Source of the DNA: Octopus sinensis
Taxonomy: Eukaryota
NCBI RefSeq assembly: GCF_006345805.1
Contig: NC_043001.1
Span: 114,700,001 to 114,764,000, forward strand
Direction: 5' to 3'
DNA: 64,000 bases
In this document: in pieces, positions 18,045 through 18,827 of the stretch
Position numbering within the stretch: position 1 is the stretch's first letter
How the letters are laid out: the number at the start of each line of letters is the position of its first letter
The notes under the pieces: generated by a model
What the model saw: the letters and a program-made list of their open reading frames with translations, nothing else
Told to the model about the DNA's origin: nothing
Database searches by the model: none
Made by a program: the position numbers and the translations under genes

Positions 18045-18827
18045 ACCTTTTAGTTCAACTTTCGAAATATGGGTCCAACGATTTGGACCATATACATTCA
18101 CTAACTGAAGAACTTTCACATTTTCCTCTTTTATCCATGATCCTTTACTAGTACAGGGTTCAGTACTTTCAACTAGCGTTGACACTGTACACATGTATGG
18201 TCATGTAAGAAGCCAGCAATTAACTTGCAATCATTAGGTCCATGTTGCCCAACAAACTCTTTCAGGAGATTATCTTTCATCTTTAGTCCATCGACCTTTA
18301 TTATTTTATTGCTTGAACTGAATGATATATTATAATCGTCGTGGAGGCGCAATGGCCCAGTGGTTAGGGCAGCGGACTCGCGGTCATAGGATCGCAGTTT
18401 CGATTCCCAGACCGGGCGTTGTGGGTGTTTATTGAGCTAAAACACCTAAAAGCTCCACGAGGCTCCGGCAGGGGATGGTGGTGATCCCTGCTGTACTCTT
18501 TCACCACAACTTTCTCTCACTCTTCCTGTTTCTGTTGTACCTGTATTTCAAAGGGCCGGCCTTGTCACTGTCTGTGTCACGCTGAATATCCCCGAGAACT
18601 ACGTTAAGGGTACACGTGTCTGTGGAGTGCCCAGCCACTTGCACGTTAATTTCACGAGCAGGTTGTTCCGTTGATTCGGATCAACCGGAACCCTCGTCGT
18701 CGTGACCGACGGAGTGCTTCCATTATAATCGTGATCCAATACCTCATGATCAGTGTCATCCTAACTTTTGAATGACTGTCGATTACTGCCTCCAATCTTA
18801 TGATGCTTACTCACTACGATTGACCAT
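18045..18827 (-). pseudogene. Myb: Decayed intronless 3R-Myb (c-Myb/B-Myb family) pseudogene: N-terminus, repeat R1 and most of R2, interrupted by a SINE
   Basis: After removing the SINE and one TSD: S*DDTDHEVLDHDYNISFSSSNK/NKGRWTKDE/DNLLKEFVGQHGPNDCKLIAGFLHDHTCVQCQR*LKVLNPVLV/KGSWIKEENVKVLQLVNVYGPNRWTHISKVELKG (/ = frameshift). Collinear with c-Myb DHDY...RWTREEDEKLK...VQCQHRWQKVLNPELIKGPWTKEED..V..LV..YGPKRW..IAKHLKG. The 5' limit at 18827 is tentative. Confidence 0.88.
18340..18721 (+). mobile_element. Full-length tRNA-derived SINE with 11-bp target-site duplication
   Basis: A-box TGGCCCAGTGG 18353-63, B-box GTTTCGATTCC 18397-407; TSD ATTATAATCGT at 18329-39 and 18722-32; second copy at 31066-31357. 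Confidence 0.93.

What the first reader, a model, noticed from the sequence alone, without database searches (positions are those of the whole stretch)
18045..18827. Hidden intronless 3R-Myb pseudogene with a SINE inserted in the DHDY motif
Seen: the minus strand encodes, across three frameshifts and two TAG stops (18761-63, 18173-75), a peptide collinear with the c-Myb family N-terminus, repeat R1 and most of R2. A 382-bp SINE sits inside it, and its 11-bp TSD (ATTATAATCGT) overlaps the codons of the conserved DHDY motif, so removing it restores the frame. Knowledge: 3R-Myb is the cell-cycle Myb (Myb-MuvB), and vertebrate MYB genes have introns within the R1-R2 coding region. Inference: this is a processed retrocopy, so Myb mRNA was retrotransposed in the germ line. 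Unusually, the 5' CDS survives while the 3' part is lost at about 18045. The ORF track misses it entirely.
Basis: partly seen in the sequence, partly recalled or inferred. Interest (0 to 1): 0.75.

Follow-up and report, generated by a model that had tools for sequence, protein, structure and literature searches.

The report
Dead processed copy of octopus Myb
This is a dead, intron-free copy of the first 428 bases of the messenger RNA of this cephalopod's only cell-cycle Myb gene, later split by a SINE; it is real, but it is an ordinary genomic fossil with an unusual missing 3' end.

Summary
The minus strand of window 18054-18865 carries 419 bases of Myb-derived sequence, interrupted by a 382-bp SINE (18340-18721) flanked by an 11-bp target duplication.

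The interpretation also holds. The genome has one intact 3R-Myb gene, on contig C16. The four exons copied here are spread over about 44.5 kb there, separated by introns of 15.3, 18.0 and 10.8 kb. In the window the three exon-exon joints are seamless, so this is a processed retrocopy and not a DNA duplicate.

The copy is dead:
- the start codon has changed from ATG to GTG;
- there are two TAG stops;
- four indel sites shift the frame, and one deletion is in frame;
- the SINE insertion splits the coding sequence.

It is 92% identical to the parent, with dN/dS 0.47. Contigs from two other labelled organisms carry it, and one of them still lacks one frameshift, so the copy predates their split.

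New here:
- the copy starts with 51 nt of 5'UTR, flush against the 3' end of an older SINE;
- it ends at 18054, inside exon 4, flush against a 5'-truncated short repeat in the same orientation that ends in a TA-rich tract;
- there is no poly(A), no flanking duplication and no 3' remainder anywhere in the genome.

Whether it was born truncated (a template-switch chimera) or was cut later is unresolved. The scan has already noted other retrocopies and chimeras in this genome.

The parts
18792..18865 (-). Copy of parent exon 1. It holds 51 nt of 5'UTR and the first 23 nt of coding sequence. The start codon is changed from ATG to GTG at 18814-18812.
   Evidence: blastn and pairwise alignment to C16:42803190-42803263: 66/74 identical, no gaps.
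18722..18791 (-). Copy of parent exon 2, first part. It runs up to the H-D-Y-N codons and includes one copy of the SINE target duplication (18722-18732). It carries the GAG-to-TAG stop at 18763-18761 and a compensated +1/-1 indel pair at 18749 and 18747/46.
   Evidence: Alignment to C16:42818528 onward.
18340..18721 (+). Full-length 382-bp SINE, antisense to the Myb copy. It has a tRNA-like head by eye and no poly(A).
   Evidence: It is 96-97% identical over positions 2-382 to the 39 other copies scored. At least 4480 candidates were found in the genome. It is flanked by an exact 11-bp direct repeat. The parent gene has that 11-mer site once, with one base different.
18329..18339 (.). Second copy of the 11-bp target-site duplication ATTATAATCGT.
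18275..18328 (-). Copy of parent exon 2, second part (linker and start of R1, G-R-W-T-K). Four bases are lost at 18302-18306. One base is gained at the exon 2/3 joint (18276/75).
18126..18274 (-). Copy of parent exon 3 (rest of R1 and start of R2). It carries the TGG-to-TAG stop at 18175-18173, an in-frame loss of a His codon at 18179/78, and a 1-bp loss at 18140/39. A conserved Trp is changed to Cys.
   Evidence: 133/149 identical to C16:42836617-42836769. c-Myb R1 is the best PDB match.
18054..18125 (-). Copy of the first 74 nt of parent exon 4 (R2 up to ..THISKQL), with a 2-bp loss at 18061/60. Homology stops 30 nt before the end of that exon.
   Evidence: 68/72 identical to C16:42847592-42847665. 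c-Myb R2 scores 2.1e-11.
17904..18053 (-). Repeat 'X'. This is the last ~60 nt of a ~250-bp interspersed repeat plus its TA/TACA-rich tract. It is 5'-truncated exactly at the Myb joint and lies in the same orientation as the Myb copy.
   Evidence: 127 matches, 540 candidates. In five other copies the homology continues 110-190 nt upstream of this point. A second 5'-truncated copy is seen in L020.
18861..19131 (-). Repeat 'Y'. This is an old tRNA-like SINE whose canonical 3' end (..CACGTG) overlaps the first 5 nt (ACGTG) of the Myb copy. It is pre-existing target DNA.
   Evidence: 2181 candidates were found, and the hits end at 18861. In nine other copies the flanks differ beyond that end. The window copy is 82% identical to the family consensus, against 86-92% for the others, so it is older than the Myb copy. 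The 19120-19131 start is read by eye from the alignment.

Best explanation
This is a dead processed pseudogene of the genome's single 3R-Myb gene.

A spliced Myb mRNA was reverse-transcribed in the germ line, presumably by a LINE enzyme. The cDNA was pasted into contig C5, at the TA-rich end of an older SINE (Y). The copy covers the first 428 nt of the parent transcript: 5'UTR, N-terminus, R1 and about 60% of R2. It has no promoter of its own.

It has since decayed as neutral DNA. The start codon is lost, there are two stops, and there are four frame-shifting indel sites. A younger SINE later landed in the H-D-Y-N codons and made an 11-bp duplication.

The copy is shared by at least three labelled organisms. 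It has no function that can be read from the sequence.

What is shown: intron loss, the parent gene, the lesions, the SINE insertion, and the relative ages of the elements. What is inferred: LINE-mediated retroposition, and the way the 3' part went missing. For the 3' loss, the two options (born truncated by a template switch onto the X repeat RNA, or cut later) are about equally likely.
For: Parent gene:
- The genome-wide search finds one parent locus, whose R1 and R2 exons lie 11 kb apart.
- Four consecutive segments of the copy map to four C16 exons with canonical splice borders.
- The parent goes on to encode the rest of R2 and R3.
- Its best PDB match is c-Myb 1H88 at 1.2e-31.

Nature of the copy:
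- No homology to the parent's upstream region or introns exists in the window, apart from unrelated repeats.
- 382/415 aligned bases are identical. Over 114 codons dS is 0.146, dN is 0.069 and dN/dS is 0.47, as expected for one neutral and one constrained lineage.
- The lesions are mapped.

Relative ages:
- The SINE is 96-97% identical to the 39 other copies scored, so it is younger than the copy.
- Y is 82% identical to its consensus, so it is older.

Other organisms:
- An organism B contig covers 18088-18334 with 2 differences and no gaps.
- An organism D contig covers the same span with 4 differences and an extra base that restores the ancestral C at 18138/39.
- A second organism D contig (18722-18890) crosses the Y/Myb joint.
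Against: - There is no poly(A) tail and no recognisable target-site duplication around the retrocopy, so two classical hallmarks are missing.
- The enzyme is not identified.
- The parent's transcription start is not mapped, so 'complete 5' end' is an inference. It rests on the promoter-like CCAAT and TGACGTCA motifs 120-130 nt upstream (by eye).
- dN/dS rests on only 27 substitutions.
- Expression was not tested. No RNA run is on record as holding the stretch.
Confidence: 0.95

Rival explanations
1. Sub-hypothesis A, on the 3' end only: the copy was born truncated, as a two-part chimeric retrocopy. Reverse transcription started on an X-repeat RNA at a TA-rich target and copied its last ~60 nt. 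It then switched to Myb mRNA inside exon 4 and ran to the mRNA's 5' end. The cDNA was joined to the target through the 5-nt ACGTG microhomology at the end of Y.
For: - X is 5'-truncated exactly at the joint, abuts Myb directly, and lies in the same orientation.
- Another 5'-truncated X copy exists, as expected of an element moved by target-primed reverse transcription.
- There is no poly(A), and the Myb 3' part is found nowhere in the window or genome.
- The SINE inside the copy also lacks poly(A), which hints at LINE partners that do not prime on poly(A).
- The structure fits features ii and iv of known chimeric retrogenes (PMC2104539).
- Unchecked notes of this scan report U6-, tRNA- and 18S-LINE/SINE chimeras, and an insertion bias for (TA)n, in this same genome.
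Against: - In described chimeras the 5' part is a full-length RNA copy. Here the switch would have had to land inside the mRNA or on a broken mRNA.
- Flanking direct repeats cannot be seen because both sides are TA-rich.
- The X piece differs from its family consensus at 7 of 60 positions (by eye), no closer than other copies. This does not show that it is the same age as the Myb copy.
- The orientation match has a 50% chance under the rival.
Confidence: 0.45
2. Sub-hypothesis B, on the 3' end only: a longer, poly(A)-tailed retrocopy was inserted first. It later lost everything 3' of mid-exon 4. The loss came either through a deletion that also removed the 5' part of a neighbouring X copy, or through an X insertion that deleted target DNA.
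For: - Fragmentary old pseudogenes are common (general knowledge).
- The copy has had time for five other indels and a SINE hit.
- The joint shows at most 1-3 nt of microhomology, which fits end joining as well.
Against: - It needs a loss of roughly 2-3 kb whose far end happens to fall in a repeat of the same orientation.
- No trace of the remainder exists beyond X in the 64-kb window or elsewhere.
Confidence: 0.45
3. The stretch is a decayed DNA-level (segmental) duplicate of part of the Myb gene.
For: None found.
Against: - Three introns totalling 44 kb are precisely absent, with seamless joints.
- There is no intron or promoter homology.
Confidence: 0.01
4. The stretch is a live Myb-like exon or gene whose 'lesions' are assembly errors, or a Myb/SANT-domain gene of a transposon such as Harbinger.
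For: - Three of the indels sit in A runs, where long-read assemblies can err.
Against: - Contigs from two other labelled organisms reproduce 18088-18334, which holds a TAG and four of the indel sites, with 0 or 1 gap.
- The 382-bp SINE, the two stops and the lost ATG are not homopolymer errors.
- The stretch is 92% identical in DNA to the cellular Myb exons, 5'UTR included.
- Only one copy exists, so it is not a transposon family.
Confidence: 0.01

Closest known systems
Classical processed pseudogenes (LINE-mediated retrocopies of spliced mRNAs, as catalogued in mammals)
   Same: - Introns are removed exactly.
- The location is unlinked to the parent.
- Homology is limited to the transcript.
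- Decay is neutral, with stops and frameshifts, and later transposon hits.
   Different: - The 5' end is kept and the 3' end is missing, whereas the usual copy is 5'-truncated and 3'-complete.
- There is no poly(A) tail.
- No visible target-site duplication is present.
Chimeric retrogenes made by template switching of LINE reverse transcriptase (U6-L1 and mRNA-L1 in mammals; WEIRD-MGL and Mg-SINE in Magnaporthe; PMC2104539)
   Same: A cellular RNA copy that reaches (or nearly reaches) its 5' end is joined directly, in the same orientation, to a 5'-truncated short retroelement end.
   Different: - The cellular part is not a full-length RNA copy.
- Flanking direct repeats cannot be shown.
- The partner is a short repeat with a TA-rich end, not a characterised LINE.
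Animal 3R-Myb genes (c-Myb, A-Myb, B-Myb; Myb-MuvB cell-cycle factor)
   Same: - The parent on C16 has R1, R2 and R3 with all the spaced tryptophans.
- It matches c-Myb best (1.2e-31).
- The copy derives from it at 92% DNA identity.
   Different: - The window copy holds only the N-terminus, R1 and about 60% of R2.
- It lacks a start codon.
- It cannot make a DNA-binding domain.

Membership tests
Processed pseudogene / retrocopy | Lacks the parent's introns, with exact exon-exon joints | tested here: met
   Three of three joints are seamless against C16 exons that have AG/GT borders. The introns are 15,264, 17,962 and 10,822 bp.
Processed pseudogene / retrocopy | Homology confined to transcribed, spliced sequence; unlinked to the parent | tested here: met
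   The copy is on C5 and the parent on C16. There is no match to parent upstream or intron DNA beyond shared repeats.
Processed pseudogene / retrocopy | 3' poly(A) tract | tested here: not met
   The copy ends inside exon 4 at 18054 and runs straight into repeat X.
Processed pseudogene / retrocopy | Flanking target-site duplication | tested here: inconclusive
   No direct repeat other than TA-rich microsatellite similarity brackets the insert.
Processed pseudogene / retrocopy | Disabled reading frame and relaxed constraint | tested here: met
   ATG is changed to GTG, there are two TAG stops and four frame-shifting indel sites, and a SINE is inserted. dN/dS against the parent is 0.47.
3R-Myb family (ancestry of the copy) | Three tandem Myb repeats R1-R2-R3, closest to c-Myb/B-Myb rather than SNAPC4, CDC5L or plant R2R3 proteins | tested here: met
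   This holds for the parent. Its exons encode R1, R2 and R3. 1H88 c-Myb scores 1.2e-31, against SNAPC4 at 2e-16 and CDC5L at about 1e-5. The copy's pieces hit c-Myb R1 and R2 best.
3R-Myb family (as a working gene) | Open frame through a complete R1-R2-R3 DNA-binding domain | tested here: not met
   The copy stops in R2, lacks R3, and is broken in at least eight places.
Template-switch chimeric retrogene (PMC2104539 criteria) | The 3' part is a 5'-truncated retroelement, joined directly in the same orientation | tested here: met
   X is cut at the joint while other copies continue 110-190 nt upstream. The orientation of X is inferred from its constant TA-rich end and from 5'-truncated copies.
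Template-switch chimeric retrogene (PMC2104539 criteria) | The 5' part is a full-length copy of a cellular RNA | tested here: not met
   Only the first 428 nt of the Myb transcript are present. Exon 5 and later exons are absent.
Template-switch chimeric retrogene (PMC2104539 criteria) | The whole chimera is flanked by short direct repeats | tested here: inconclusive
   Both borders are TA-rich, and no clear repeat is seen.
SINE insertion (the 382-bp element) | Full-length member of a high-copy family, bracketed by a target-site duplication at a site that is single in the uninterrupted sequence | tested here: met
   At least 4480 candidates were found, and the copies scored are 96-97% identical over the full length. 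The direct repeat is an exact 11 bp. The parent has the site once.
SINE insertion (the 382-bp element) | tRNA-derived head with A and B boxes | tested here: inconclusive
   Box-like motifs are seen by eye. ARAGORN and Rfam give no tRNA call.

The most novel reading that the evidence does not exclude
The Myb fragment was never longer. It is a chimeric retrocopy born when the reverse transcriptase of a (TA)n-favouring octopod LINE switched from a short-repeat RNA to an internal point of Myb mRNA. If this is the usual route in a genome whose LINEs do not prime on poly(A), it would explain tail-less, 3'-truncated mRNA retrocopies in cephalopods. The alpha-SNAP copy noted elsewhere in this scan would be a second case.
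Probability: 0.4. Interest if true: 0.4.

Novelty: new member of a known kind. Interest (0 to 1): 0.25.

Why it matters
The stretch should be annotated as a pseudogene and masked from gene prediction.

It has three modest practical uses:
- It gives the exon map of the N-terminal half of the real 3R-Myb gene.
- It shows that spliced Myb mRNA was present in germ-line cells of an octopod ancestor.
- It offers three nested, dated insertions (old SINE, then Myb copy, then young SINE) plus a lineage-specific frameshift, all usable as rare-genomic-change markers among closely related octopods.

The only point of wider interest is the 5'-kept, 3'-lost, tail-less shape. If it reflects template switching, it says how retrocopies are made in genomes without poly(A)-priming LINEs.

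Tried and rejected
- Search for the 3' remainder. blastn of parent exons 4 (tail), 5 and 6 against the window found nothing. A six-frame search of the whole genome with the exon-5 peptide found only the parent.
- Tripartite chimera Y-Myb-X. Rejected because Y is more diverged from its family consensus (82%) than other copies (86-92%), and far more than the Myb copy is from its parent. Y was therefore already in place.
- Y inserted into the copy's 5'UTR. Rejected because there is no parent homology upstream of Y.
- Y and X as two ends of one element split by Myb. Rejected because Y copies end at the same base with unrelated flanks.
- X as a MITE with inverted ends. Only about 9 nt of inverted similarity is seen, so this is not supported.
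- tRNA and Rfam scans of 16-21 kb gave no tRNA. The weak miRNA rows are TA-microsatellite artefacts.
- SINE presence or absence in other organisms. The contigs break at 31-mers shared by the copy and the parent, so this could not be read.
- Contigs of organisms C and E over the Myb part look like the parent's exons laid at 85% likeness. They are no evidence either way.
- Expression. No RNA holder is on record and no raw RNA reads were laid.
- The large protein searches, structure prediction and complex prediction were not used. The parent alignment made them unnecessary.
- Spliced model. Exons were searched one by one by reference.

Full report
WHAT IS THERE

The window is G000:C5:114700001-114764000, from a 2.72-Gb assembly of 13,516 contigs. 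Earlier notes of this scan call the organism an octopus. I did not test the species.

Read on the minus strand, 18865-18054 gives a Myb N-terminus with ..VLDHDYN.. It then gives repeat R1 and the first part of R2. The reading has TAG stops at 18761-63 and 18173-75 and several frame changes.

A 382-bp element (18340-18721) sits between two exact copies of ATTATAATCGT, at 18329-39 and 18722-32.

The protein pieces score as follows:
- Pfam PF00249 at 8e-6 and 0.006.
- PDB c-Myb 1H88 at 1.8e-5 for R1 and 2.1e-11 for R2.

With the default 60-aa cut, no ORF in the list covers the stretch.

THE PARENT GENE

Six-frame searches of the whole genome with the two pieces found, besides the window itself, one strong locus on contig C16. 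There the R1 and R2 parts lie 11 kb apart, each in an open exon with AG and GT borders.

I fetched 100 kb of C16 and aligned it with the window copy after removing the SINE and one duplication copy. Four consecutive segments of the copy map to four exons:

| Exon | C16 coordinates | Notes |
|---|---|---|
| 1 | 42803190-42803263 | ATG at 42803241 |
| 2 | 42818528-42818654 | |
| 3 | 42836617-42836769 | |
| 4 | 42847592-42847695 | copied only up to 42847665 |

The introns between them are 15,264, 17,962 and 10,822 bp. Further downstream the parent encodes the rest of R2 and R3. It matches c-Myb at 1.2e-31, well ahead of SNAPC4 and CDC5L. It is the only such gene found.

WHY THIS IS A RETROCOPY

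In the window the exon joints are seamless: 18792|18791, 18277-18274 and 18126|18125. No parent intron or upstream DNA is present. The copy lies on a different contig.

DECAY

Against the parent, 382 of 415 aligned bases are identical (Jukes-Cantor distance 0.084). Over 114 gap-free codons dS is 0.146, dN is 0.069 and dN/dS is 0.47. That is what one neutral and one constrained lineage would give, though it rests on only 27 changes.

The lesions are:
- ATG to GTG at 18814-12.
- GAG to TAG at 18763-61.
- TGG to TAG at 18175-73.
- Loss of 4 bp at 18302-06.
- Gain of 1 bp at the exon 2/3 joint (18276/75).
- An in-frame loss of a His codon at 18179/78.
- Loss of 1 bp at 18140/39.
- Loss of 2 bp at 18061/60.
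- A compensated +1/-1 pair at 18746-49.
- A conserved R1 tryptophan changed to cysteine.

THE SINE

The element is full length and 96-97% identical to the 39 other copies scored. At least 4480 candidates were found. It is therefore younger than the Myb copy.

It lies antisense to the copy. Its 11-bp duplication covers the codons H-D-Y-N, and the parent has this site once. Because SINE plus duplication is 393 bp, the SINE does not change the frame by itself.

OTHER ORGANISMS

Public contigs were laid on 16800-20000.
- Organism B has 18088-18334 with 2 differences and no gaps. This confirms the TAG and the indels there independently of the assembly.
- Organism D has the same span with 4 differences and one extra base. 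That base restores the ancestral C at 18138/39, so this frameshift arose after D split off and the retrocopy is older than that split.
- A second contig of D (18722-18890) crosses the joint with repeat Y.
- Contigs end where the copy and the parent share 31-mers. For that reason the state of the SINE in B and D could not be read.
- The rows for organisms C and E over the Myb part look like the parent's exons.

THE TWO ENDS

5' end. Homology to the parent starts at 18865, after 51 nt of 5'UTR. It begins directly at the canonical 3' end of an old tRNA-like SINE family, Y. Y has 2181 candidates, and its hits end at 18861. Nine other copies end at the same base with unrelated flanks. Y and Myb share the five bases ACGTG at the joint.

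The window's Y is 82% identical to a leave-one-out consensus, against 86-92% for other copies. Y was therefore there first. About half of the other Y copies are followed by TA/TACA-rich tracts.

3' end. Homology stops at 18054, 30 nt before the end of exon 4. It runs straight into the last ~60 nt and the TA-rich tract of a ~250-bp repeat, X. In five other X copies the homology continues 110-190 nt upstream. X is therefore 5'-truncated at the joint and lies in the same orientation as Myb.

No poly(A) or bracketing direct repeat is present. No exon 5 or 6 sequence exists in the window or elsewhere in the genome.

HOW THE 3' PART WENT MISSING

Two readings fit.

(A) Born truncated. Reverse transcription began on an X RNA at a TA-rich target and switched to Myb mRNA. 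It ran to the 5' end of the mRNA, and the cDNA was joined through the ACGTG microhomology. This meets two of the five published criteria for chimeric retrogenes: the 3' part is 5'-truncated, and the join is direct and in the same orientation. The criterion that truncation sites are random was not tested. It fails the criterion 'the 5' part is full length'. The criterion of flanking repeats stays open (PMC2104539).

(B) A longer copy lost its 3' part later. The loss came through a deletion, or through an X insertion that removed target DNA.

I rate them about equal. Unchecked notes of this scan describe U6-, tRNA- and 18S-LINE/SINE chimeras in this same genome. They also describe LINEs that favour (TA)n and another 3'-truncated retrocopy. 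I treat these as leads only. They kept reading A at parity despite a lower prior from mammals.

VERDICT

It is a new member of a well-known kind, the processed pseudogene, with an uncommon 5'-kept, 3'-lost, tail-less shape.

PROCEDURE

Exons were searched one by one by reference. 

Noticed in passing
window 38634-40171: A 1.5-kb (ATAC)n microsatellite with 388 copies at 90% match. It produces three overlapping stop-free pseudo-ORFs of 530-626 aa in the ORF list. A 330-bp (TA)n lies at 37096-37426.
   Followed up: partly
window 19209-19347: Another short repeat just upstream of Y. It is 88-92% identical to its other copies, with more than 3000 candidates in the genome. It was not classified.
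   Followed up: no
L009 (C16:42808307-42810877, parent intron 1) and window 12140-12684: Intron 1 of the Myb gene holds an open 857-aa LINE-like frame with endonuclease and reverse-transcriptase-like sequence (by eye). The window has a 71%-identical fragment of the same family.
   Followed up: no
window 18861-19131 versus 18340-18721: The old SINE Y and the young SINE inside the Myb copy share a very similar tRNA-like head and the motif that follows it (by eye). They look like an older and a younger family of one SINE lineage.
   Followed up: no
L020 1592-1890 (G000:C4, about 140713100-140713500): A full X repeat in one orientation abuts, head to head, a 95-nt 5'-truncated X in the other orientation. 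Each faces a TA tract.
   Followed up: partly
window 18153: This site has three states. On the minus strand the parent has A, this assembly has T, and organisms B and D have C.
   Followed up: no
G000:C16:42796001-42896000: The 100-kb parent region contains one run of 100 N (an assembly gap or a withheld stretch). Its position relative to the Myb exons was not checked.
   Followed up: no
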